A DNA stretch of 64,000 nucleotides from Obrimoposthia wandeli (lineage: Eukaryota), in NCBI GenBank assembly GCA_977020255.1, contig CDROCS010000253.1, positions 1,054,001 through 1,118,000 on the forward strand, in the 5' to 3' direction. Shown piece after piece: positions 4,441 through 54,430 of the stretch. Position 1 is the stretch's first letter. Every line of letters starts with the position of its first letter. The translations under genes and the position numbers were made by a program. A model generated the notes under the pieces. The model worked only from the letters and a program-made list of their open reading frames with translations. It searched no databases and was not told the origin of the DNA.

Positions 4441-4956
4441 TTACTTGTTGTTTTTGTCAATTTTTGCTTCTTTTTCAAGCTTTTTTTGAATACGTTGACG
4501 CTTTAGTGGCGATAGGTAATCAACAAATAAAATACCTTTTAAGTGGTCAAGTTCATGTTGTATACAAATACTTTGTAATTCAGTGGCATTTAAAGTGAAT
4601 TCTTTACCATGGCGGTCAAGTGCTCTTACAGTACATGCATCATGGCGGTCTACTTTGGCATAAGTGCCAGGAACGGATAAGCAGCCTTCTTCATTTATTG
4701 ATGTTTCATTACTGGTAGCAATAATTTCTGGGTTGATAAAGATAATGGGTTGGTCATTATCTTCAGAGGTATCCATCACAACAATACGTTGATGAACATC
4801 AACTTGAGTCGCAGCAAGACCTACGCCATTTTCTTCGTACATGGTTGCCAGCATATCGTCTATAATTGTCGCCGTAGCATCAGTAATATCAGTAACGGGC
4901 TGCGCTTTTGTTCTCAAACGCGGATCAGGAAAACGTAAAACAGTTAAAATAGTCAT
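4441..4956 (-). CDS. def: Peptide deformylase
   Basis: GVGLAA, EGCLS, HELDH. Confidence 0.98.
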
Positions 4957-14961: not shown

Positions 14962-15276
14962 TAATTGAAAGGGGATTTACGATCATGGCTCAAGATTGAA
15001 CACTTTGGCAGCCAGGCTTAACACATGCAAGTCAGGCGGTAACAGAGAAGGGAATGGCTTGCTATGCTGACGAAGGAAGCGGCGGACGGGTGAGTAATGC
15101 TTGGGAATATGCCTTATGGTGAAGGGGGACTAACAAGGAAAACGATGCTAATACCGCATAACGTCTACGGACCAAGGGGGGATCTTCTGGACCTCTCGCC
15201 ATTTGATTAGCCCAAAGTGAGATTAGCTGGTTGGGTGAGTAATGGCTCACCAAGGCGACGATCTCTAGCTGTGGTT

Positions 15277-15312
<36 letters not shown>

Positions 15313-16449
15313 AAGCCCAGACTCCTACAGGAGGCAGCAGTGGGGGTATTGCACAATGGGCGAGAAGCCTGATGCAACCATGCCGCCATTGTGAAGAAGG
15401 CCTTCGGGTTGTAAAGCACTTTCAGTTGTGAGGAAAGAATTGTAGTTAATAGCTGCATTTCTGTGACGTTAACAGCAGAAGAAGCATAAACTACTTCCGT
15501 GCCGGCAGCCGCGGTAATACGAGGGGTGCAAGCGTTAATCGGAATTACTGGGCGTAAAGCGTTCGTGACGGTCTATTAAGCAAGATGAAAGCCAGAAGAC
15601 TCAGCCTTGGAACACCAGACTGGTAGACTGAAGTACTGTAGAGGGTGGTGGAATTTCCGGTGTAGCGGTGAGGAAATGCGTAGGGTGGAAGGAACATCAG
15701 TGGCGAGAGGCATGCCTGGACGAATACTGACGCTGAGGAACTAAGCGATGAGGGAGCGAACAAGGATTAGATACCCTGTGGAAGTCCGCCGTAAACGATG
15801 TCTTTAGCCGTTTGTGGACGATCATGATGCGCAGCTAACGCACTAAGTTGACCGCCTGGGGAGTACGGCCGCAAGGTTAAACTCAAGCTAAGATGAGCAA
15901 AGGGGCTGCACAGCGGTGGGCATGGTTTAATTCGATGCAACGCAGAAGAGCCCTTACCATCCCTTATTCAGAAAGACTAAAAGATAGACTTGTGCCTTCA
16001 AGGGAACTCTGTGACAGGTGCTGCATGGCTGTCGTCATCGTGTTGTGAAATGTTGAGTTCGAATCCACAACGGAAGCACCAACCTATCATATTTGCCAGC
16101 GCGATTTACTGGCAGGAGCTCAAAGGGAGACTGGGGTGATAAACTGGAGGAAAATTAAAGGGACGACGTCAGTCATCTGTAACCCATACGGGATGGGCTA
16201 CACACGTGCTACATTAGCGTATAGAGAGTGCTGCAATACGGCGAGGTGGGGCGAAGGACACAGAGTACGGCGTAGTCCGGATTTGGGTCGGCAACGCGAC
16301 GTCATGAAGTCGGAATCGCGCTAGTAATCGTAGATCAGGGAATGCTACATTGAAATACGGACCGGGCGCGTACACCATAAAATGGGAGTGGGATGCAAGA
16401 AGTGGCTAGTTTAAGCCCTTTCAGGAGGACGGTCACCACTTTGTGTTTT

Positions 16450-16480
<31 letters not shown>

Positions 16481-16513
16481 CCTAGGGGAACCTGGGGTTG
16501 GATCACCTCCTTA
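14962..16513 (+). rRNA. rrs: 16S rRNA copy 1 (indel-ridden as given)
   Basis: Collinear with copies 2-4 but with dense small indels; anti-SD cacctcctta intact. Confidence 0.9.
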
Positions 16514-16607
16514 TCTTGAAGTAAAATTGCTTAATGGAAATCAGTTTTCGGATTGTATTTCACGAGTGTTCACACAAATTACATGATAACAAATTAGAAG
16601 AAACAAT

Positions 16608-16623
16608 AGGTCTGTAGCTCAGC

Positions 16624-16656
<33 letters not shown>

Positions 16657-16684
16657 GGCAGTTCAAGTCTGCCCAGACCTACCA
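16608..16684 (+). tRNA. tRNA-Ile(GAT)
   Basis: 77-nt cloverleaf, anticodon loop ctGATaa, CCA end. Confidence 0.97.
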
Positions 16685-17224
16685 GTACCCCGATTTTACC
16701 GCGTTGCTTGAGGCCTACCTTATAAAGAATACCTATGCGTCGCATTCAAAAGCCTTGTAAAAAAGCAAATGGGGATTTTACTTCTTCTCTAAAGAAAGAG
16801 ACCAAACTTAAAACATCATTTGATGATGAGTTAAGTTTGGTTTTTTAAACCACTTTTTTAACCGAATGCGTGTTAAGAATGAGTTCTTTAACAATCTGGA
16901 AAGCTGATATAAATATCGGTATTTATAAGGTAAACACGGTGTCGCGCTGTTGTTTACATGATTATAAATACCAAGCTGTTATGACATTCTCTTATCACAT
17001 TGGGGTGTTTAGGAGTAGTGGAAATGGTGCATCCCCCAAGGATGTATTATCGAATTCATACTGTTCGAAAGAACATGATGTCTTATCAAGTAACTCATCT
17101 TATTTAGTTGTTTTTAAATAATTAAATATTGAGTACGTGAAAATGTCAGACTTTACAATTGCCTTGGATTAGTCTCCGGGGCGCACTTCGTTTTCAAATC
17201 TTTGGATGAGACTACTTGGGTTAA

Positions 17225-19475
17225 TGTTGAGAGAGTGACTAAGCGTATGTGGTGGATGCCTTGGCAGTTAGAGCGATGAAGGACGTTAATCTGCGAAAAG
17301 CGTTGGTAAGGTGATAAAAAGCCGTTATGGCCAACGATGTCGAATGGAAACCCACTTAGCATAAGCTAGGTATCTGGTTACGTGAATACATAGCGTAACG
17401 AAGCGAACCGGGAGAACTGGGGAAACATCTAAGTACCCCGAGGGAAGAAATCAGCCGAGATTTCGTTATTGGCGGCGAGCGAACGCGAATCAGCCCTTAA
17501 GCTTATTAGGCGCTAGTAAATGTTCTGGAAGGACAACGATACAGGGTGATAGTCCGTATACTAAACTTAAACCTTCAGAGGTAAAGAAATCGAGTAGGAC
17601 CCGGAGCACGTGAAACTTTATTCGAATATGGGGGACCGTCTCAGGCTAATACTGCAACTGACCCGTATCAGTGAACCAGTACCAAAATAGAAAGGCGAAA
17701 AAGAACCCCTGTGAGGGAGTGAAATAGAACCTGAAACCGCATACGTACAAGCAGTGGGAGCCCGATTTAGTCAGTGGCTGCGTATAATTGGTCAGCGACT
17801 TATATTCTGTAGCGGTTAACCGATTTAGGGAGCCGTGAAAGCGAGTGTTAATCCGTGCGCTTAGTTGCAGGGGTATAGACCTGAAACCCGGCGATGCGCT
17901 CACCATGGCAGGTTGAAGGTTGAGAACATCGCTGGAACTGAGACCGAACACGTATGCTGAAAAAATGCGGTGATGACTTGTGTGGTCGGAGTGAAAGGCT
18001 AATCCAAGCCGGGAATAGCTGGTTCTCCCTGAAATCTATTGATGAGGCCTCGCACGAACACCATTGGGGGTAGCACTGTTAAGGCTAGGTCATCCTGACT
18101 TACCAACTCCTTTGCAAACTCCAGATCACCAATGAGTGATATGCGGTACACTGCGGGTGTAACGTCCGTTGTGAAGAGGGAAACAACCCAGACCGCCAGC
18201 TTACGTCCCAAAGTACTAGTTATGGGAACGATGTGAAGCAAGTACAGACAGCTAGGAGGTTGGCTTAGAAGCAGCCATCCTTAAAGAAAGCGTAATAGCT
18301 CACTAGTCGAGTCGATTCGCGGAAGATGTAACGGGGCTAAACCAGTCACCGAGCTGCGGATTTGCAATTATTCAAGTGGTAGGGGAGCGTTCTGTAAGCC
18401 GTTGAAGGTGAATTGAGAGAGTTTGCTGAGGTATCAGAAGTGCAATTACTGACATGAAATGTAACGATAAGGGGGAGGTGAAAAACTCCCTGCCGAAAGA
18501 CCAAGGTTTCCTGTCCCATGTTAATCAGGGCAGTGGTAAGTCAGAAGCGGCCCTTAAGGCGAGGCGGAAACGCGTAGTCGATGTAGGAAACAGATTAATA
18601 TTTCTGTACTTCTATATATTGCGAAGGAGGGACGGTAGGCTAGATAGCGGCACGGCGTTGGTAGTCCGTGTGAAAGATGTAGGTAGGGGCGGTTGACTTA
18701 GGTAAATCCGGGTCTTCACATTCAACACTGAGAGTCGAGACGAGTCACTACGGTGACATGAAGTCATTTGATGCCATGCTTCCAGGGAAAGCTTCTAAGC
18801 TTCAGATATATAGGAACCGTACCCCAAACCGACACAGGTGGTTAAGGGTAGAGAATACTAAGGCGCTTGAGAGAACTCGGGTGAAGGAACTAGGCAAGAA
18901 TAGTACCGTAATCTTCGGGAGAAGGTACGCTGCTCAACGTTAAACCCTTGCGGTGTAAGCCGAAGAGTAGTCGAAGTAACCAGGTGGCTGGAACTGTTTA
19001 TTAAAAACACAGCACTGTTGCAAAAATCGAAAGATGACGTATACGGTGTGACGCCCGGTGCCCAGTGCCGGAAGGTTAGGTGATTCGGTTAGTCCTCTCG
19101 GACGAAGCTGATGATCGAAGCCTCGGTAAACGGCGGCCGTAACTACTAACGGTCTTTCAGTCCCTAAGGTAGCGAAATTCCTTGTCGGGTAAAGTTCCGA
19201 CCTGCACGAATGGCGTAATCACTGTAGCCACACTGTCTCACCCGAGACTCAGTGAGATGAATTTGCGGTTAAGATGCCGCATAATACCCAGCGGCTAGAC
19301 AGGAAGAGACCCCGTGAACCTTTACTATGCTTCGACAGGTGAACATTGCTCCTACATGTGTAGGATAGGTGGAGGCGTTGAAACTGTCGCTAGATGAAGT
19401 GGAGCCAATCTTGAAATACCACCCTTGTATGCGTGATGTTCTAACCTAGGGCCCTTATCGGGCTTGGGACAATGT

Positions 19476-19527
<52 letters not shown>

Positions 19528-19664
19528 TCAAAGGTTGGCTAAGTACGGTCGGACATCGTACGGTTAGTGCAATGGCATAAGCCAGCTTGATTGCGAGACA
19601 TACAGGTCGAGCAAGTACGAAAGTAGGACTTAGTGATCCGGCGGTACCGAATGGAAGGGCCGTC

Positions 19665-19717
<53 letters not shown>

Positions 19718-19733
19718 CCACATCGACGGCGGT

Positions 19734-19776
<43 letters not shown>

Positions 19777-19778
19777 TC

Positions 19779-19811
<33 letters not shown>

Positions 19812-19980
19812 TGGTACGCGAGCTGGGTTTAGAACGTCGTGAGACAGTTCGGTCCCTATCTGCCGTGGGCGTTTGAGAATTGAAGAGGGCTGCTCCTAGT
19901 ACGAGAGGACCGGAGTGGACGAACCACTGGTGTTCGGGTTGTCATGCCAATGGCATTGCCCGGTAGCTACGTTCGGAACT

Positions 19981-20011
<31 letters not shown>

Positions 20012-20147
20012 AGGCTTTGAGATGAGTTCTCACTGGGACTTTAAGTCCCCTAAAGGGTCGTTGGAGACTACAACGTTGATAGGTCAGGTGTGTAAGTGCT
20101 GCGAGGCATTGAGCTAACTGATACTAATTACCCGTGAGGCTTAACCA
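17225..20147 (+). rRNA. rrl: 23S rRNA copy 1 (indel-ridden to about 19470, foreign-type patches 19471-19721; start approximate)
   Basis: Collinear with copies 2-4. Confidence 0.9.
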
Positions 20148-20297
20148 TACAACACCCAAGTAGTTTTGCTGAAAAGTGAACGCTGAGTGATTTGTATAAA
20201 GACTGACACAGAAAACATCACGTACTTACGTGTTACTTGAAACTAAAAAACGATATTTATAGCTCATTGAGCAAGCTTTCTAAGATTGTACCTTTTT

Positions 20298-49685: not shown

Positions 49686-50591
49686 TTAAGTAGTTAACGG
49701 CATCAATTTAGGTATATCTATGGCGTGTTTAATAGCTAAACTATCGAAAGCGGTCCACTGTGCTATGGCAAGTGGCTCAAAAAGACTGTTAGATTGTTTG
49801 TCGTCTATGTGATCAAAATACCATAAACCATTGATAAAGAAGCTATAGAGAATATAGTAAGTCAGTAATGTGTTATTAGGTCTGTAGCTTGGTACTAACA
49901 TTCTATAGTTATCGACTATTTTACTTATATGGAAGGGGGGAATGTTGTTAACAGCGATAAACATCGCTAAGTCAAATTCTATGGGTGCTAAATGTGCACA
50001 TTCGAAATCTATTAACCAAGTTTTTTGAGCTTGATCAATCATAATATTGCTGTAATTAATATCACCATGGCAAAGAACGATATCAGTGTCAGAGAGGCTT
50101 TGCAGTGACTCAATGTTAAAAGTCAGTATCTTGGTGACATCTTTTAAGATATGTCCTTGTCGTGCTGGTATAGAGCCTGGATTAGTGAATAAGCTCTGTA
50201 CAGACTTTGAAGTCTCTAGATAGGGGATAGTATGCTGTAGTGGTTTTAACTGATGTAACTTAGCCATAAGACTTAAGCCAATAGAAATGCATTTACTACT
50301 GTGGCGTTCAGTTTTATCTAAGGTAATACCCTCAATAAACTCAGTAACTAACCAAGTGTTATCATGATAAATAACGCGAGGGCTTAGCCTATTTTTTGCT
50401 GCATATTGGCTAGATAAAACCTCATCTCTTGCCGTTTCACTATTGAGTCTTTTTACAAAAAAAGTCTGTGAAGGTGTGGTAACTGTAATACAGGTATGGC
50501 TCATACCATCAATCAATAATGAAATATCTATAACCTCTTCAAAACAAGGTAGAGATTTTAGCGCATTAAGTTGTGAAGAGGTAAGCGACAT
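49686..50591 (-). CDS. APH/choline-kinase-family phosphotransferase, probable thiamine kinase (ThiK-like)
   Basis: CHGDINYSNI (Brenner motif), LIDFE; operon context. Confidence 0.75.
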   Translation of the reverse strand: MSLTSSQLNALKSLPCFEEVIDISLLIDGMSHTCITVTTPSQTFFVKRLNSETARDEVLSSQYAAKNRLSPRVIYHDNTWLVTEFIEGITLDKTERHSSKCISIGLSLMAKLHQLKPLQHTIPYLETSKSVQSLFTNPGSIPARQGHILKDVTKILTFNIESLQSLSDTDIVLCHGDINYSNIMIDQAQKTWLIDFECAHLAPIEFDLAMFIAVNNIPPFHISKIVDNYRMLVPSYRPNNTLLTYYILYSFFINGLWYFDHIDDKQSNSLFEPLAIAQWTAFDSLAIKHAIDIPKLMPLTT

Positions 50592-50605: not shown

Positions 50606-51250
50606 TTAGTTAATGGTAGAAGGTTGTAAATTAATTGAAGACTTTTGGTAAAGTTTCAACCATTTGATATAACCGTAACAGGCAACAATAACGAATATAA
50701 CGAATAAAATCGTGGTTGGAATTAAACCTTTCTCGACATATAAATAAATAGACGTCAGATCAATAATTATCCAATAAAGCCAATTTTCTAGCACTTTTTT
50801 GGCAACTAGATAAGTAGCAAATACCGCATAAACACTAGTGAAAGTATCTAAATAAGGAAAATGTGCTGGAGTATAGTTAGCCATAAGGTAACCTAAGCCA
50901 GTGGCAAGCAGCGCTAAGCCAAAACAAACTTTAATATGCCAACTCAGCTGCCAGCTAACTATGGTTAGCTCAGGAGTACTCGTCTGACTCTTGTTTGTTG
51001 CTTTAGACCATTGCCAGTAACCATAAATAGCCATAAACAGGTAATAAGCGTTCAACGCACTGTCCATTAACAGTAAAACATCATAAAAAATAACAGTGTA
51101 TAAGGCTGTACTAATAAATGCCGCAGGCCAGCACCATAGTGAACCTTTAGCGGCTAAAATTACGTAAGCAATTGAGAGCAGCATAGCAATAAGCTCAAAC
51201 CAGGGTAGCTGTTGGAAGTAGACTAATACACTGTTTAAAATTTCAGACAT
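50606..51250 (-). CDS. pnuC: PnuC-family transporter (PnuT-like, thiamine)
   Basis: LWCWPAA, YGYWQW, DTFTS, ENWLYW. Confidence 0.9.
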   Translation of the reverse strand: MSEILNSVLVYFQQLPWFELIAMLLSIAYVILAAKGSLWCWPAAFISTALYTVIFYDVLLLMDSALNAYYLFMAIYGYWQWSKATNKSQTSTPELTIVSWQLSWHIKVCFGLALLATGLGYLMANYTPAHFPYLDTFTSVYAVFATYLVAKKVLENWLYWIIIDLTSIYLYVEKGLIPTTILFVIFVIVACYGYIKWLKLYQKSSINLQPSTIN

Positions 51251-51516
51251 TAACTTTCTGCTTCAACTTGTGAACGATCACCATTAATAAATTTACAGAC
51301 AAAAACTGCAGCGCCTGTCGTTTTATGTACATGCTTAATTTCAGCCATTACATGGCTAACAGCAAGATCATAGTCACCAAATACTTGTGTACTCATACCG
51401 TTGGTGACTACATTCAGGCCCTCAACAGCTCTTAAGCGTTTAATGAATGCCCATATTTCAGTTTTATACTGTTCTTCGGCTAACGGGTAGAAGCTCAGTT
51501 CAATAGATATTTTCAT
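51250..51516 (-). CDS. YkoF-like thiamine-binding protein
   Basis: ISIELSFYPL, TNGMSTQVFG; 1-bp overlap with pnuC start. Confidence 0.8.
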   Translation of the reverse strand: MKISIELSFYPLAEEQYKTEIWAFIKRLRAVEGLNVVTNGMSTQVFGDYDLAVSHVMAEIKHVHKTTGAAVFVCKFINGDRSQVEAES

Positions 51517-51602: not shown

Positions 51603-53789
51603 CTAAAATTGATAATTTAAAGTTGCGCCAAATACTAGTGGCTCAGATAACTGAGTATGTGCCTTGGGGGTATAGCCGTCACGAGGGTCATTATCAAAAT
51701 AAAAACCACGGTTAGCATACACTTCATCCGTTAAGTTACGACCCCAAAGTTTAACTTGCCAGTTATCTTGAATATAAGAAACCGATGCATTGAGCAATAT
51801 AATTGATTCAGACTTGAGATCTTCATCAGAAATCGGTGCGAAACTACCATCATAGCCATAATCAAAATAACGAGTGTCAGAAAAATAGAATTCATCTTTA
51901 CCGTCAACTGAGATATTAAATAACCATTCATCTGTTGGTTGATAGTTAACACCGACATTAAACTGATAACTAGGCGCATGTGACTGTTCAGCACCTGTAA
52001 GTGAATTTTGCTTTGCATCAATGAATTCATTAAATTCAGTTTCAAGTAAACCCAATGAACCATAAACATTAACATGGTCATTGATAGTCCAAGCAGATTC
52101 GATTTCAGCGCCATAATTACTACCTGAAGTAGCATTACCTAGATAACTAACAAACTCAGTGCCATTACCTTCCTTAATGATTCTTGAGCTCTTAACTTGC
52201 ATATCATCACGATCCATATAGAAAAGAGCAGTACGTATATAAGCACTGTTGTCTAATAAGGTGACTTTATAGCCAAGTTCATAGTTCATCAAATATTCAG
52301 GATCAAAACTGCGTAAGTCTTCAGGCAAAGTACCATCAGTATTATGTCCACCGGCTTTATAACCACGGTTAACAGAAGCGTACCATAGGTTATCTTCTGT
52401 TTGTTGGAAACTAAGTACTAACTTACCACCAACCATAGTATCGTCAATACTGTCATCAAACTGATCTGAATTGTTATAACTAGCTTGGTAGTCTTCAATA
52501 CGTAAACCAGAAACTAAAGACCAACGTTCACTCAGTTGTGTGTCTAATTGACCATATATTGCAAGATTGGTACGTTCATTAGTTGAGGTGAAATCAAAGT
52601 TTTTAGTAGCATTATCATTCCTAGTATATTGACGCAATAAATCTTCATCATCTTGCTTATAGAAAATACCAGCAACCCAGCTAGTGCTGCCATTAAAGAT
52701 TTCTGCACCATCCTTAGACATCGCGCGTAACTCAGCGGTGGTAACTGCTTTTTCACGGAAGTAATGGTCGGTAGAGCTAAATTCCCAGTATGCAAAGTCA
52801 GGATGAATATCAGGGTTGATAGTCGGATCTGATATACCAACATACGCCCAGTCTTCATCGAAACCATAAGCTAAGTCAGAATCAGCATTACTCACAATAG
52901 CGATAACCGTTGCACTGTCAAAGCCTTGGTAAGTAAATTTAGCCGACAAGGCCGTGGTTTCTTGTTGATCAAAGCCTGGTTGGTCGGAGTATGTCTCTCT
53001 AGTATTATCTAAAGAAAATGTATCGTAACCATTATCAAAATCAAAATAATAGCCAGCAAGCTCTATAGTAAGGTCGTTACTCGCTTCAATAGCTAACTTG
53101 CCGCGAATGCTTAGTTCATCACGATTGTTGGTATCATCACGTTGTAAATAGACATTTTCTATATAGCCATCACTGTTACTTTGATTAACTGCTAAACGGT
53201 AATTTACCGAATCACTGGCAGGACCAGATAAGGCTACACCCATATCATAGGTATTATAATTTCCAACGCCAAGTTGAACGGCACCTTCAAAGTCTTCGGT
53301 CGGCTCGTTGGTGGTAATATTGATCATACCGGCAATCGCATTGGCACCAAAACGGGTACCTTGCGGACCTCGAAAAATTTCGGCTTGTTTAACGTCAAAT
53401 AAAGAAGCAACACTACCTATACCAGTGAAATCTACCTCATCAATGATCACGCCAACAGATGGATTGATAGGTTCTTGGAACTGACTACGTTCGCCAATAC
53501 CACGGATTTGGTAATAACGTGCCCGTTGTGAGCCACTGGCAAAGTTAACATTGGGGCTGACAGCAATTAATTCTTCAAGATGTTTGGCATTGCGTTGTTT
53601 AATTTCAATATCCGTTAATACTGACATTGAAGTTGGGGAGTTTTGCAGACTTTGCTGGCGAAAATCACTAGTAACGGTGATGGTTTCAATGCTGCTGGTG
53701 TCATTACTCACTTGTTCTTCAGCTAAAGCGGTAAAGTGAAAGATACTTGTAGTGATAGCTAAACAAATAGCTGATTTGCGGAACGTCAT
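51603..53789 (-). CDS. TonB-dependent receptor (probable thiamine-related)
   Basis: Signal peptide, TonB box ETITVT, plug IFRGPQGTRFGANAIAGMIN, terminal YQF. Confidence 0.93.
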   Translation of the reverse strand: MTFRKSAICLAITTSIFHFTALAEEQVSNDTSSIETITVTSDFRQQSLQNSPTSMSVLTDIEIKQRNAKHLEELIAVSPNVNFASGSQRARYYQIRGIGERSQFQEPINPSVGVIIDEVDFTGIGSVASLFDVKQAEIFRGPQGTRFGANAIAGMINITTNEPTEDFEGAVQLGVGNYNTYDMGVALSGPASDSVNYRLAVNQSNSDGYIENVYLQRDDTNNRDELSIRGKLAIEASNDLTIELAGYYFDFDNGYDTFSLDNTRETYSDQPGFDQQETTALSAKFTYQGFDSATVIAIVSNADSDLAYGFDEDWAYVGISDPTINPDIHPDFAYWEFSSTDHYFREKAVTTAELRAMSKDGAEIFNGSTSWVAGIFYKQDDEDLLRQYTRNDNATKNFDFTSTNERTNLAIYGQLDTQLSERWSLVSGLRIEDYQASYNNSDQFDDSIDDTMVGGKLVLSFQQTEDNLWYASVNRGYKAGGHNTDGTLPEDLRSFDPEYLMNYELGYKVTLLDNSAYIRTALFYMDRDDMQVKSSRIIKEGNGTEFVSYLGNATSGSNYGAEIESAWTINDHVNVYGSLGLLETEFNEFIDAKQNSLTGAEQSHAPSYQFNVGVNYQPTDEWLFNISVDGKDEFYFSDTRYFDYGYDGSFAPISDEDLKSESIILLNASVSYIQDNWQVKLWGRNLTDEVYANRGFYFDNDPRDGYTPKAHTQLSEPLVFGATLNYQF

Positions 53790-53852
53790 AAAATCTCATC
53801 AAAAAAATAAAAAGTAGGAGCGTGTGCAAACAGGATAATTTTTGATGAATGT

Positions 53853-53907
53853 TATACCAATGGCACTAATTTATTGCTAAGTGGTCAATTAATTAATGTA
53901 CTTGATA
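53853..53907. repeat. Mini inverted-repeat element related to the 54119 MITE
   Basis: tataccaatggcactaatttattg-ctaagtggt-caattaattaatgtacttgata; left arm resembles the TIR at 54118. Confidence 0.6.
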
Positions 53908-53921
53908 TCAATTTTATCTAT

Positions 53922-54035
53922 AACCATCCCTATGCCAGAAAATTATTCAAAATAATTTTCTGCCCAGGTTCAAAGAGTATATATCTCAGCGACAAATCAG
54001 TTAAAAAAGATTAAATGACAGCGCACCCCTTGGTT
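53922..54035 (-). ncRNA. TPP-riboswitch-like aptamer with variant P4/P5 arm
   Basis: P1 ACCA/UGGU, P2 AGGGGU/ACUCUU, GCUGAGA, GAACCUG...UAGGGA; P5 region atypical. Confidence 0.8.
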
Positions 54036-54117
54036 TCATTCTATTCTAGCAAATAATTTCACTATAATCTTACTATTGTTGAGTAGCTTAGGTATATTGT
54101 TTAATCAACATTGTGAT

Positions 54118-54430
54118 TATACCAATCGGACTAATTTATTGATCACTTAGCGAGAATTAAAAGGCTTAGAGGCAAGGCATTGATTGAAGAGAATGGTTAT
54201 TAAGGAGAATCTCCTGCATTCACTAAGAAGCTACATCCATGTAGCGTCCTTGTCAAAATTAATAACGCTGCATGTCAGCCTTTTAAAATCGCCTTTCAGG
54301 AGCTCATTAGCAAACTGATAACATCACAAAATGAATAAAATATAGACTAACTATGTTTAACTCATTTTGCTTGTTTTAAGCTCGCTAATGCAGCTCTAAG
54401 CTGACCAATAAATTAATCCGTTTGGTATTA
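54118..54430. mobile_element. MITE-like non-autonomous element (about 310 bp)
   Basis: TIRs ataccaatcggactaatttattgatca-cttag vs rc ataccaaacggattaatttattggtcagcttag; TA at ends; internal ttaaaaggct/agccttttaa stem; no ORF. Confidence 0.75.

What the first reader, a model, noticed from the sequence alone, without database searches (positions are those of the whole stretch)
53922..54035. TPP-riboswitch variant with intact pyrimidine sensor but rebuilt pyrophosphate sensor: candidate new ligand specificity
Seen: the minus-strand leader reads ACCAAGGGGUGC...GCUGAGAUAUAUACUCUUUGAACCUG-GG-CAGAAAAUUAUU-UUG-AAUAAUUUUCUG-GCA-UAGGGAUGGU. P1, P2, the UGAGA loop and P4 are canonical. Established: in E. 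coli thiM, CCUGAUC-P5-AUAAUG loop-CGUAGGGA supplies the Mg2+/pyrophosphate pocket (G60, A61, C77, G78) and the L5-P3 docking. Here GAUC becomes GGGC, the CG junction becomes CA, and the short L5 is replaced by a perfect 12-bp AU-rich stem with a 3-nt loop (53936-53962). Inference: the aptamer may sense unphosphorylated thiamine, TMP or a pyrimidine vitamer, which would fit the importer plus kinase operon it leads. Alternatively it is decayed.
Basis: partly seen in the sequence, partly recalled or inferred. Interest (0 to 1): 0.8.

Follow-up and report, generated by a model that had tools for sequence, protein, structure and literature searches.

The report
Colwellia variant thiamine (TPP-type) riboswitch
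The leader of a thiamine-uptake operon in this Colwellia genome carries a conserved offshoot of the TPP (vitamin B1) riboswitch that keeps the pocket for the vitamin's pyrimidine ring but has a rebuilt phosphate-sensing side, so it is a real switch whose exact ligand preference needs a bench test.

Summary
Window 53922-54035 (minus strand) matches the whole Rfam TPP model, but at only 36.9 bits against a threshold of 54.3. P1, P2, CUGAGA and P4 are intact. J4-5 is GG and J5-4 is GCA, so the pyrophosphate-contacting G78 is A. P5 is a 12-bp hairpin and the optional P3a hairpin is missing.

It is neither an error nor a private change.
- The same "type A" leader occurs once per genome in 27 of 55 Colwellia species.
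- All core nucleotides are invariant, while P3 and P5 covary.
- P5 length ranges from 6 to 12 bp.

Most other Colwellia species (about 23 of the 55) carry a sister "type B", with a long P5 but C77/G78 kept. Sister genera carry a canonical TPP riboswitch on the same operon (TonB-dependent receptor (TBDR), MTH1187/YkoF-like protein, PnuC-like carrier, ThiK-like kinase). A receptor tree places the canonical form as ancestral.

A conserved expression platform offers two exclusive pairings, which fits a translational OFF switch. The same chromosome keeps a canonical TPP riboswitch on thiC.

Decay is therefore unlikely. A new ligand is possible but unsupported by gene context. My best guess is a thiamine-family sensor, probably still TPP with altered affinity. 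No earlier scan note or paper was found describing it.

The parts
54043..54051 (-). Inferred promoter, an extended -10 (TGCTAGAAT). The predicted transcript start is about 7 nt downstream, at the foot of P1.
   Evidence: Sequence. The same motif sits directly upstream of P1 in other type A, B and C leaders, and in L010, which lacks the aptamer. The simple sigma-70 scan did not list it because there is no -35. Inferred, not shown.
53922..54035 (-). Type A aptamer, a TPP-riboswitch derivative running from P1 5' to P1 3'.
   Evidence: RF00059 at 36.9 bits over the full model. My own covariance model R1 scores it at 138 bits. The structure is 95% paired across 25 distinct sequences, with 13 covarying pairs.
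53974..54030 (-). Pyrimidine-sensor arm. P2 is 54025-54030 paired with 53974-53980. P3 is 53989-54024. J3-2 CUGAGA is 53984-53989. There is no P3a hairpin.
   Evidence: alignment. CUGAGA and the P2 nucleotides are invariant in 25 sequences, and P3 has 4 pairs with compensatory changes.
53965..53973 (-). J2-4 (UUGAA, 53969-53973) and the P4 5' strand (CCUG, 53965-53968).
   Evidence: Invariant in all type A sequences and identical to the Rfam consensus.
53963..53964 (-). J4-5 'GG', where the canonical sequence is AU or AA.
   Evidence: G in 24 of 25 and G in 25 of 25 sequences.
53936..53962 (-). Extended P5 hairpin: 12 bp plus a UUG loop in this strain.
   Evidence: In relatives it is 6-12 bp with other sequences, and 9 of 12 pairs show changes on both sides.
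53929..53935 (-). J5-4 'GCA' (53933-53935, where the canonical sequence is CG, so position 78 is A) and the P4 3' strand UAGG (53929-53932).
   Evidence: G in 25 of 25, C in 24 of 25 and A in 24 of 25 sequences. The exception is L039, with GUG.
53850..53909 (-). Hairpin fragment of about 60 nt from a dispersed MITE-like repeat, inserted between the aptamer and the expression platform.
   Evidence: It is absent from the short-form leaders (L009, L013, L020, L023 and others) and present in others. It folds as its own hairpin inside the loop of the anti-sequestor helix. The repeat motif is matched.
53823..53848 (-). Switching strand UCAUCAAAAAUUAUCCUGUUUGCACA. It pairs either with the aptamer's 3' strand (anti-sequestor) or, through UCAUCAAAAA, with the ribosome-binding region (sequestor).
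   Evidence: RNAfold on the window and on 11 relatives. Each pairing is 88% kept across 13 leaders, against 34-67% for slid controls. Inferred.
53787..53804 (-). Ribosome-binding region UUUUGAUGAGAUUUU plus the start codon ATG (53787-53789) of the receptor gene.
   Evidence: In the aptamer-closed fold this region is paired.
51603..53789 (-). TonB-dependent outer-membrane receptor (TBDR), 728 aa, the first gene of the operon.
   Evidence: Pfam Plug and TonB_dep_Rec_b-barrel domains. Orthologues were found in 57 loci.
51250..51516 (-). 88-aa protein with an MTH1187/YkoF-like (thiamine-binding family) fold.
   Evidence: Pfam PF01910 and PF07615 match only at E about 0.02. The AlphaFold model has pLDDT 87. 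Top Foldseek hits are 2eky, 1vk8 (TM0486), 2ibo and 1lxn, with TM 0.65-0.72.
50606..51250 (-). PnuC-family inner-membrane carrier (PnuT-like).
   Evidence: PF04973 at 3.4e-51. TIGR01528 match.
49686..50591 (-). APH-family small-molecule kinase. The best named relative is thiamine kinase ThiK, but only distantly.
   Evidence: PF01636 and PF01633. TIGR02721 at 51.6 bits, far below its cut-off of 299.

Best explanation
This is a working, lineage-specific descendant of the TPP riboswitch that turns off translation of a thiamine-uptake and trapping operon. The operon encodes a TonB-dependent receptor (TBDR), an MTH1187/YkoF-like binding protein, a PnuC-type carrier and a ThiK-like kinase.

The aptamer keeps the three-way junction and the CUGAGA pocket that grips the aminopyrimidine ring. 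The P4/P5 arm is remodelled into a 2x3 internal loop (GG opposite GCA, with A at the pyrophosphate-contacting position 78). The stem above that loop varies freely in length and has lost the L5 consensus that normally docks on P3.

Proposed mechanism:
- Without ligand, the 3' strand of the aptamer (UGGCA..GGGAUGGUU) pairs with AAUUAUCCU..UUGCACA downstream. This ties up the anti-Shine-Dalgarno stretch UCAUCAAAAA and leaves the ribosome site open.
- With ligand, P1 and P4 close, and UCAUCAAAAA pairs with UUUUGAUGA at the ribosome site and start codon.

The ligand is a thiamine-family compound. Most likely it is still TPP, read with a different (probably weaker) affinity than the canonical thiC riboswitch of the same cell, so that uptake is shut off later than synthesis.

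Shown: the sequence, its conservation, the covariation, its phylogenetic origin and the alternative pairings. Inferred: ligand binding, the ligand's identity and the direction of regulation.
For: - The full-length match to RF00059 has an intact core.
- 27 of 55 Colwellia species genomes carry exactly one copy, at 82-141 bits with model R1. Only 3 of 151 sampled family genomes do.
- All 21 metagenome contigs matching the type A motif (16 distinct aptamer sequences) are type A. Wherever a downstream ORF could be read it begins with the receptor's signal peptide (MTF/MKF..KS). Two contigs, L091 and L110, gave no usable ORF.
- In 25 distinct sequences every unpaired core nucleotide is invariant or nearly so. 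13 of 34 pairs show compensatory changes, and 0 of 500 shuffles reach this.
- Receptor proteins in these genomes are only 72-92% identical, so the invariance reflects selection.
- The receptor tree shows type A (support 100/100) as sister to type B, with both nested among canonical leaders.
- The platform's two exclusive helices are predicted in the window and in relatives. They are 88% kept across 13 leaders. In L039, GGUGU in J5-4 is matched by ACACC in the platform.
- MITE insertions sit in the loop of the anti-sequestor hairpin, where they would not break it.
- The same chromosome has a canonical TPP riboswitch (70.6 bits) upstream of thiC-thiO.
- The orthologous operon is under a canonical TPP riboswitch in Cognaticolwellia, Thalassotalea and Pseudocolwellia at 68.7 bits, which argues for the same physiological signal.
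- A61G in thiM did not impair TPP switching (bioRxiv 10.1101/2025.01.21.634073).
Against: - G78 is among the most conserved TPP-riboswitch nucleotides and makes the direct pyrophosphate contact (PMC3764141).
- Engineered changes at the pyrophosphate site of thiM reduce the TPP response while ligands that use the pyrimidine pocket still bind.
- L5-P3 docking, reported to add stability and specificity (PMC4775224), has no conserved counterpart here.
- Covariation in the expression platform is statistically weak, because there is little variation.
- One species lost the aptamer altogether (L010). Two lack U79 and two carry a 330-nt insertion in the leader, so constraint is not absolute.
- No binding or expression data exist.
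Confidence: 0.55

Rival explanations
1. Altered specificity. The rebuilt P4/P5 junction no longer reads the pyrophosphate, and the switch responds mainly to another thiamine vitamer that carries the aminopyrimidine ring. Candidates are free thiamine, TMP, HMP-P/HMP-PP, HMP or AmMP. This would give the uptake operon direct feedback from what it imports.
For: - Position 78 is A in 24 of 25 type A sequences. The one exception changes C77 to U instead.
- G78 and C77 are the bases that hydrogen-bond the beta-phosphate.
- J5-4 has gained a nucleotide and J4-5 is GG, so the pocket geometry must differ.
- The L5 consensus is lost.
- In a 401-genome sample of Gammaproteobacteria, no other real TPP-like element had A at this position.
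- The cell keeps a canonical TPP sensor on thiC, so two differently built sensors coexist.
- There is precedent: rare variants of the FMN and guanine classes have new ligands (PMC6298564 and PMC9295807, listed).
Against: - The gene association is unchanged from canonical relatives, and the kinase shows no type A-specific shift. It is 31-33% identical in all three pairwise comparisons.
- Conservation of GCA is partly explained by its pairing with the expression platform.
- Type B shows that the long P5 and the GR/GCR loop arose while C77/G78 were kept.
- No ligand data exist.
Confidence: 0.28
2. No longer ligand-responsive. The element is a structured leader kept for mRNA stability, translation efficiency or another factor, or it is slowly decaying.
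For: - The score is far below the Rfam threshold.
- C. asteriadis lost the aptamer.
- L021 and L057 have a one-base deletion at U79.
- Mobile-element insertions lie between the aptamer and the platform in many species.
- Predicted diatom TPP aptamers are reported not to regulate (PMC9544697, listed).
Against: - The ligand-pocket nucleotides (CUGAGA, UUGAA, CCUG, UAGGGA) are invariant across species whose flanking receptor proteins differ by up to 28%. A mere structural leader would not need them.
- Helices are preserved by compensatory changes.
- There is a matched pair of alternative platform helices.
Confidence: 0.1
3. Assembly or sequencing artefact, or a strain-private mutation.
For: None found. 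The window lies in a 1.35-Gb multi-organism assembly.
Against: A contig of another study is identical over 53830-54060. The same architecture occurs in 27 species genomes and 21 metagenome contigs.
Confidence: 0.01

Closest known systems
TPP riboswitch / THI element (Rfam RF00059; for example E. coli thiM and thiC)
   Same: It has the P1-P5 three-way junction, the CUGAGA pyrimidine-sensor loop, UUGAA, P4 CCUG/UAGG, a GGGA-type closing segment and G60. It is placed on thiamine genes and has an OFF-switch platform that sequesters the ribosome-binding site.
   Different: The score is 31-37 bits against a threshold of 54.3. J4-5 is GG instead of AU/AA. J5-4 is GCA, with one extra nucleotide and A in place of G78. 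P5 is a variable 6-12-bp stem without the L5 consensus. P3a is absent.
Colwellia 'type B' leader (this work: L027, L028, L031, L047, L066-L079)
   Same: It sits on the same operon and locus in the sister clade of the genus. It also has a long variable P5, a G at position 61 and an unpaired G76. It also falls below the Rfam threshold (39.6 bits).
   Different: It keeps C77 and G78 (GCG), has A rather than G at the second J4-5 position, keeps the P3a hairpin, ends in UAGGAAUGG, and has a different platform (GCCGGAUCC pairing with GAGAUC).
Bacteroides OMthi-pnuT-tnr3 thiamine uptake operons under TPP riboswitches (PMC5613172)
   Same: It has the same logic: an outer-membrane TonB-dependent receptor plus a PnuT carrier plus a thiamine-phosphorylating enzyme, all behind a thiamine-family riboswitch.
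   Different: The Bacteroides leaders are reported there as TPP riboswitches. The trapping enzyme is a pyrophosphokinase, not an APH-type kinase. There is no MTH1187-like gene.
Engineered thiM pyrophosphate-site mutants (bioRxiv 10.1101/2025.01.21.634073)
   Same: The changes are at positions 61, 63, 77 and 78. A61G is tolerated. Other changes weaken the TPP response while the pyrimidine pocket still binds ligands.
   Different: They are laboratory mutants in a canonical scaffold with L5 intact. G78A itself was not reported there.
HMP-PP riboswitch (thiS motif; PMC6478431)
   Same: It is a second natural riboswitch class for a thiamine-pathway compound that shares the aminopyrimidine ring.
   Different: It has an unrelated small terminator-embedded fold. 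There was no Rfam match to it here.

Membership tests
TPP riboswitch (RF00059) | Covariance-model score at or above the curated gathering score (54.3 bits) | tested here: not met
   The window scores 36.9 bits. Two other type A leaders score 31.7 and 35.3 bits, and canonical orthologous leaders score 68.7 bits.
TPP riboswitch (RF00059) | P1-P5 secondary structure with two arms on a three-way junction, supported by covariation | tested here: met
   95.4% of cells are paired. 13 pairs have changes on both sides, and 0 of 500 shuffles reach this. Slid controls are 36-56% paired. P1, P2 and P4 never vary, so their support comes from conservation only.
TPP riboswitch (RF00059) | Pyrimidine-sensor loop J3-2 (C)UGAGA | tested here: met
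   Invariant in 25 distinct type A sequences and aligned to the model's UGAGA.
TPP riboswitch (RF00059) | Pyrophosphate-sensor nucleotides G60, C77 and G78 in a 2x2 J4-5/J5-4 loop | tested here: not met
   G60 and C77 are present. Position 78 is A in 24 of 25 sequences. The loop is GG opposite GCA, which is 2x3. The roles of these bases are taken from PMC3764141 and bioRxiv 10.1101/2025.01.21.634073.
TPP riboswitch (RF00059) | Short P5 with a conserved L5 (about AUAAUR) that docks on P3 | tested here: not met
   P5 is 6-12 bp with unrelated loop sequences. Canonical relatives have GGAUAAUACC. Docking itself cannot be tested here.
TPP riboswitch (RF00059) | Location in the leader of thiamine synthesis or transport genes | tested here: met
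   The operon is a TBDR, an MTH1187/YkoF-like protein, a PnuC-like carrier and a ThiK-like kinase. Downstream genes were examined in four loci: the window, L013, L027 and L034. The 88-aa ORF was recovered downstream in 39 distinct versions across the related loci. Metagenome copies with a readable downstream ORF start with the receptor's signal peptide.
TPP riboswitch (RF00059) | Selective binding of thiamine pyrophosphate | not testable with these tools
   This needs in-line probing, ITC or reporter assays.
MTH1187/YkoF-like thiamine-binding proteins (PF01910/PF07615), for the 88-aa ORF | Profile match above the Pfam cut-off | tested here: not met
   E is 0.017 and 0.021, with 15.5 and 15.8 bits against cut-offs of 24.9 and 21.
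MTH1187/YkoF-like thiamine-binding proteins (PF01910/PF07615), for the 88-aa ORF | Ferredoxin-like beta-alpha-beta-beta-alpha-beta fold of the family | tested here: met
   The model has pLDDT 87. The best PDB matches are family members 2eky, 1vk8, 2ibo, 1lxj, 1lxn and 1yqh, with TM 0.55-0.72.

The most novel reading that the evidence does not exclude
Colwellia type A leaders, and perhaps type B as well, are a natural specificity variant of the TPP riboswitch class. The pyrimidine pocket is retained, but the rebuilt GG/GCA junction no longer selects for the pyrophosphate. The switch would then report free thiamine, TMP or a pyrimidine vitamer. If so, one cell would hold two related sensors for two different thiamine species, one on synthesis and one on uptake.
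Probability: 0.28. Interest if true: 0.85.

Novelty: new variant of a known kind. Interest (0 to 1): 0.6.

Why it matters
The TPP riboswitch is the most widespread riboswitch class and a drug target. I know of no validated natural variant with a changed pyrophosphate pocket, and none turned up in the paper library, though that search was limited.

This system offers a clean evolutionary series on one orthologous operon: canonical, then type B (P5 freed, loop enlarged, G78 kept), then type A (G78 to A, P3a lost). A canonical control on thiC sits in the same cell.

That makes two questions directly testable. How much of TPP recognition depends on G78 and on L5-P3 docking in nature? Do marine bacteria tune, or retarget, vitamin B1 sensing for salvage versus synthesis?

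There is also a practical point. Both types fall below Rfam's threshold, so this regulation is probably missing from threshold-based annotations of Colwellia genomes.

Tried and rejected
- **Whole-window Rfam scan at gathering threshold.** No TPP hit. The element appears only with the permissive scan.
- **RNAalifold and RNAfold on the aptamer alone.** They extend P2 into UUUG instead of forming P1. I used the TPP-model structure and tested it by pair counts instead.
- **Intrinsic terminator in the leader.** None was found between the aptamer and the start codon. The U-rich tract has no G+C stem before it, so transcription attenuation by an intrinsic terminator was dropped. Rho-dependent effects cannot be judged.
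- **Second promoter in the leader.** The repeated TGGTATAA(T/C) motif turned out to be the end of a dispersed MITE-like repeat. The leader copy has TATAAC, a poor -10. Bypass transcription is not excluded.
- **Gene-content signal for a ligand shift.** The kinase is about equally diverged between all three leader types and the 88-aa protein is 83% identical, so there is no signal.
- **Independent lineages with A at position 78.** The three other pattern hits in 401 Gammaproteobacteria were not TPP-like.
- **Literature.** No paper was found on a Colwellia TPP variant or on a G78A mutant. Weinberg et al. 2017 (PNAS) on variant riboswitches is not held.
- **RNA-seq.** Only metatranscriptome contigs with tiny shares were found, which cannot show transcript ends.
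- **Sequence-level PDB searches.** The 88-aa protein and the kinase gave nothing useful.

Full report
**What is in the sequence**

Rfam's TPP model (RF00059) does not reach its gathering score in a scan of the whole window. A permissive scan of 53600-54300 aligns the entire model (positions 1-105) to 53910-54040(-) at 36.9 bits, against a gathering score of 54.3.

That alignment shows what is kept and what is changed:
- **Kept:** P1 (AACCA/UGGUU), P2, P3, the UGAGA loop, UUGAA and P4 (CCUG/UAGG) all align to the model.
- **Changed:** the optional hairpin after UGAGA is deleted. J4-5 'AU' is 'G(G)'. J5-4 'CG' is 'CA'. Seventeen extra bases sit in L5.

The best base-pairing register gives P5 as CAG.../...CUG, with J4-5 = GG and J5-4 = GCA. 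This is a 2x3 internal loop in place of the canonical 2x2 loop. RNAfold gives the perfect 12-bp stem with a UUG loop at 53936-53962.

**Genomic setting**

The window lies on a 4.68-Mb contig inside a 1.35-Gb mixed assembly. Protein relatives identify the organism as a Colwellia. A contig of an unrelated study is identical over 53830-54060, so the sequence is not an assembly slip.

**Genes behind the leader**

The leader precedes four genes on the minus strand:
- A TonB-dependent receptor (TBDR, 51603-53789).
- An 88-aa protein (51250-51516). It misses the Pfam cut-offs (PF01910 and PF07615, E about 0.02). It models confidently (pLDDT 87) as an MTH1187/YkoF-like fold. The best PDB matches are 2eky, 1vk8 (a putative thiamine salvage protein), 2ibo and 1lxn.
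- A PnuC-family carrier (50606-51250).
- An APH-family kinase (49686-50591). Its best named relative is thiamine kinase, at a low score.

This is the uptake-and-trap layout known from Bacteroides OMthi-pnuT-tnr3 operons under TPP riboswitches (PMC5613172).

**Relatives show three leader types**

Fetching 57 loci with receptor orthologues showed three leader types on the same operon.

| Type | Where | P4/P5 region | RF00059 score |
|---|---|---|---|
| C (canonical) | Cognaticolwellia, Thalassotalea, Pseudocolwellia and others | CCUGAACCGGAUAAUACCGGCGUAGGRAUGG | 68.7 bits |
| B | Part of Colwellia | CCUG-GA-CGG...long variable stem...CCG-GCG-UAGGAAUGG; C77/G78 and P3a kept | 39.6 bits |
| A (window) | Rest of Colwellia | CCUG-GG-CAG...variable stem...CUG-GCA-UAGGGAUGG; no P3a | 31.7 and 35.3 bits; window 36.9 |

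I built a covariance model from 20 type A aptamers (R1).
- It finds one copy at 82-141 bits in 27 of 55 species genomes of the genus.
- About 23 further genomes give a type-B-like hit of 31-54 bits, and four give none.
- Only 3 of 151 sampled genomes of the family give a strong hit.
- A metagenome scan added 21 contigs (16 distinct aptamer sequences). Where a downstream ORF could be read, it starts with the same receptor signal peptide. Two contigs gave no usable ORF.

A maximum-likelihood tree of the receptors puts type A (support 100/100) as sister to type B (89/97), and both are nested among canonical leaders. The canonical riboswitch is therefore ancestral. The freed P5 and enlarged loop arose in the Colwellia stem lineage, and G78-to-A plus the loss of P3a arose later, in the type A branch. 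Within type A, C. asteriadis (L010) has lost the aptamer but kept the promoter.

**Selection**

In 25 distinct type A sequences aligned to the model:
- 95.4% of pair cells are standard pairs.
- 13 of 34 pairs show changes on both sides (9 of 12 in P5 and 4 of 8 in P3).
- No shuffle out of 500 reaches these values, and slid controls pair at 36-56%. The alignment was fitted to the model, which favours it. The MAFFT alignment gave the same direction, with 6 such pairs.

Every unpaired core position is invariant or nearly so. This covers CCAAGGGGUGC, GCUGAGA, CUUUGAACCUG and AGGGAUGGU. J4-5 is G (24 of 25) and G (25 of 25). J5-4 is G (25), C (24) and A (24). The receptor proteins next door are only 72-92% identical, so this is purifying selection, not recent common descent.

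P5 varies widely. It is CAGUGA/UCACUG with a 6-nt loop in L081, CAGUCCAUC.../...GAUGAACUG in L085, and AU-rich 10-12 bp in most others. P5 has therefore become a free-length stem, and no L5 sequence is conserved. The exceptions are informative. L083 has J4-5 AG. L039 has J5-4 GUG, which keeps G78 but changes C77. L021 and L057 lack U79.

**Expression platform**

After the aptamer, type A leaders share ...AUUCAUCAAAAUUAUCCUnCUUGCACACGCCCCUACUUUUUAUUUUUUUGAUGAGAUUUUAUG.

Two exclusive pairings are predicted in the window and in 10-11 relatives:
- **Anti-sequestor:** the aptamer's 3' strand UGGCA..GGGAUGGUU..GAU pairs with AUC..AAUUAUCCU..UGC(A)CA.
- **Sequestor:** when that strand is taken by P1/P4, UCAUCAAAAA pairs with UUUUGAUGA at the ribosome site. 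In the window, AUAAAAUU also pairs with GAUUUUAU across the start codon.

Each pairing is kept in 88% of cells across 13 leaders, against 34-67% when slid. There is too little variation for significant covariation. One telling case is L039, where J5-4 GGUGU faces ACACC in the platform in place of UGC(A)CA. No intrinsic terminator is present.

I read this as a translational OFF switch. That step is inferred. It also means the J5-4 bases are constrained twice, by the pocket and by the platform.

**Mobile-element insertions**

In the window, a fragment of about 60 nt from a dispersed MITE-like repeat lies at 53850-53909. A full copy is at 54105-54300, and there are at least 40 copies on the chromosome. 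The fragment sits exactly in the loop of the anti-sequestor hairpin and folds on its own. Other species have none, a similar one, or a 330-nt copy there.

**What it senses**

The arguments point two ways.

For the same signal as the parent class:
- The orthologous four-gene operon is under a canonical TPP riboswitch in sister genera.
- The operon's proteins show no type A-specific shift. The kinase is 31-33% identical in all three pairwise comparisons, and the 88-aa protein is 83% identical.
- The whole pyrimidine pocket is untouched.
- A61G is tolerated in thiM.
- Type B shows that the long P5 and larger loop coexist with C77/G78.

For a changed read-out:
- G78 is one of the most conserved bases and the direct pyrophosphate contact (PMC3764141).
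- Pyrophosphate-site mutants of thiM lose TPP response while pyrimidine-pocket ligands still bind.
- L5-P3 docking, said to add specificity (PMC4775224), has no counterpart here.
- A sample of 401 Gammaproteobacteria held no other real TPP-like element with A at that position.
- The same cell keeps a canonical TPP riboswitch (70.6 bits) on thiC-thiO.

My estimates:
- About 0.9 that this is a working thiamine-family riboswitch.
- About 0.55 that TPP remains the physiological ligand, probably at a different set-point, so that uptake is repressed later than synthesis.
- About 0.28 that specificity has moved to thiamine, TMP or a pyrimidine vitamer.
- About 0.1 that it no longer binds a ligand.

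**Comparison with known systems, and novelty**

It works like a TPP riboswitch and descends from one. It fails three membership features that I could test: the Rfam score, G78 with the 2x2 pocket, and the L5 consensus. I therefore file it as a new variant of a known kind rather than a plain member.

I found no paper describing it, but the library is partial. The key 2017 survey of variant riboswitches could not be read.

**Verdict**

The 'decayed' alternative is rejected. The 'new ligand' idea is neither supported nor excluded, and it is cheap to test because nature supplies the canonical, type B and type A forms on one operon.

Noticed in passing
window 54105-54300 (-), 53850-53909 (-), 54406-54430 (+): A MITE-like dispersed repeat ending in CAAUAAAUUAGUsCsAUUGGUAUAA has at least 40 copies (81-99% identical) on this chromosome. 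One full copy lies just upstream of the riboswitch promoter. A 60-nt hairpin fragment sits inside the leader, and a third partial copy is nearby. Two other Colwellia (L012, L022) carry a roughly 330-nt copy at almost the same leader position.
   Followed up: partly
window 14966-20148 (+): One of the four rRNA operons in the window scores far below the others (16S 671 against about 1567 bits; 23S 1910 against about 2830 bits). Many small insertions and deletions show in the Rfam alignment. It is either a degenerate copy or a local assembly or consensus problem.
   Followed up: no
L010:4552-5001 (Colwellia asteriadis): The orthologous receptor operon keeps the extended -10 promoter but has no aptamer at all, a secondary loss inside the type A clade.
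   Followed up: partly
L027, L028, L031, L047, L066-L079 (about 4720-4925 in the 12-kb loci): 'Type B' Colwellia leaders are TPP-like aptamers of 140-165 nt. They have a very long, variable P5, a GA/GCG junction and C77/G78 kept. They score 31-54 bits with R1 and 39.6 bits with RF00059. They too are missed at Rfam's threshold and would deserve their own test.
   Followed up: partly
L029:4700-5003 and L030:4650-5003: Two assemblies that also hold a type A locus carry a second receptor copy in another genomic context. Its type B aptamer has lost its 5' half (P1/P2, and in L029 also CUGAGA). This is either a paralogue with a broken switch or a mixed bin.
   Followed up: no
window 51250-51516 (-): The 88-aa MTH1187/YkoF-like protein is 83% identical between genera, where the receptor is 57-59% and the kinase 31% identical. 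It is unusually constrained for a small protein that Pfam does not recognise.
   Followed up: partly
G000 contigs C4398:82950-83040, C6659:41738-41853, C3865:22797-22888, C3971:163381-163471, C4653:133398-133498, C4455:33536-33653: Other sub-threshold RF00059 matches (37-45 bits) occur in other organisms of the same mixed assembly. They may be further diverged TPP-type leaders.
   Followed up: no
L086:150-250 (G000:C253:1255758-1255855): A canonical TPP riboswitch (70.6 bits; CCUGAUCAGAUUAAUAUCUGCGUAGGAA) lies upstream of thiC and a DAO-family (ThiO-like) gene on the same chromosome.
   Followed up: yes
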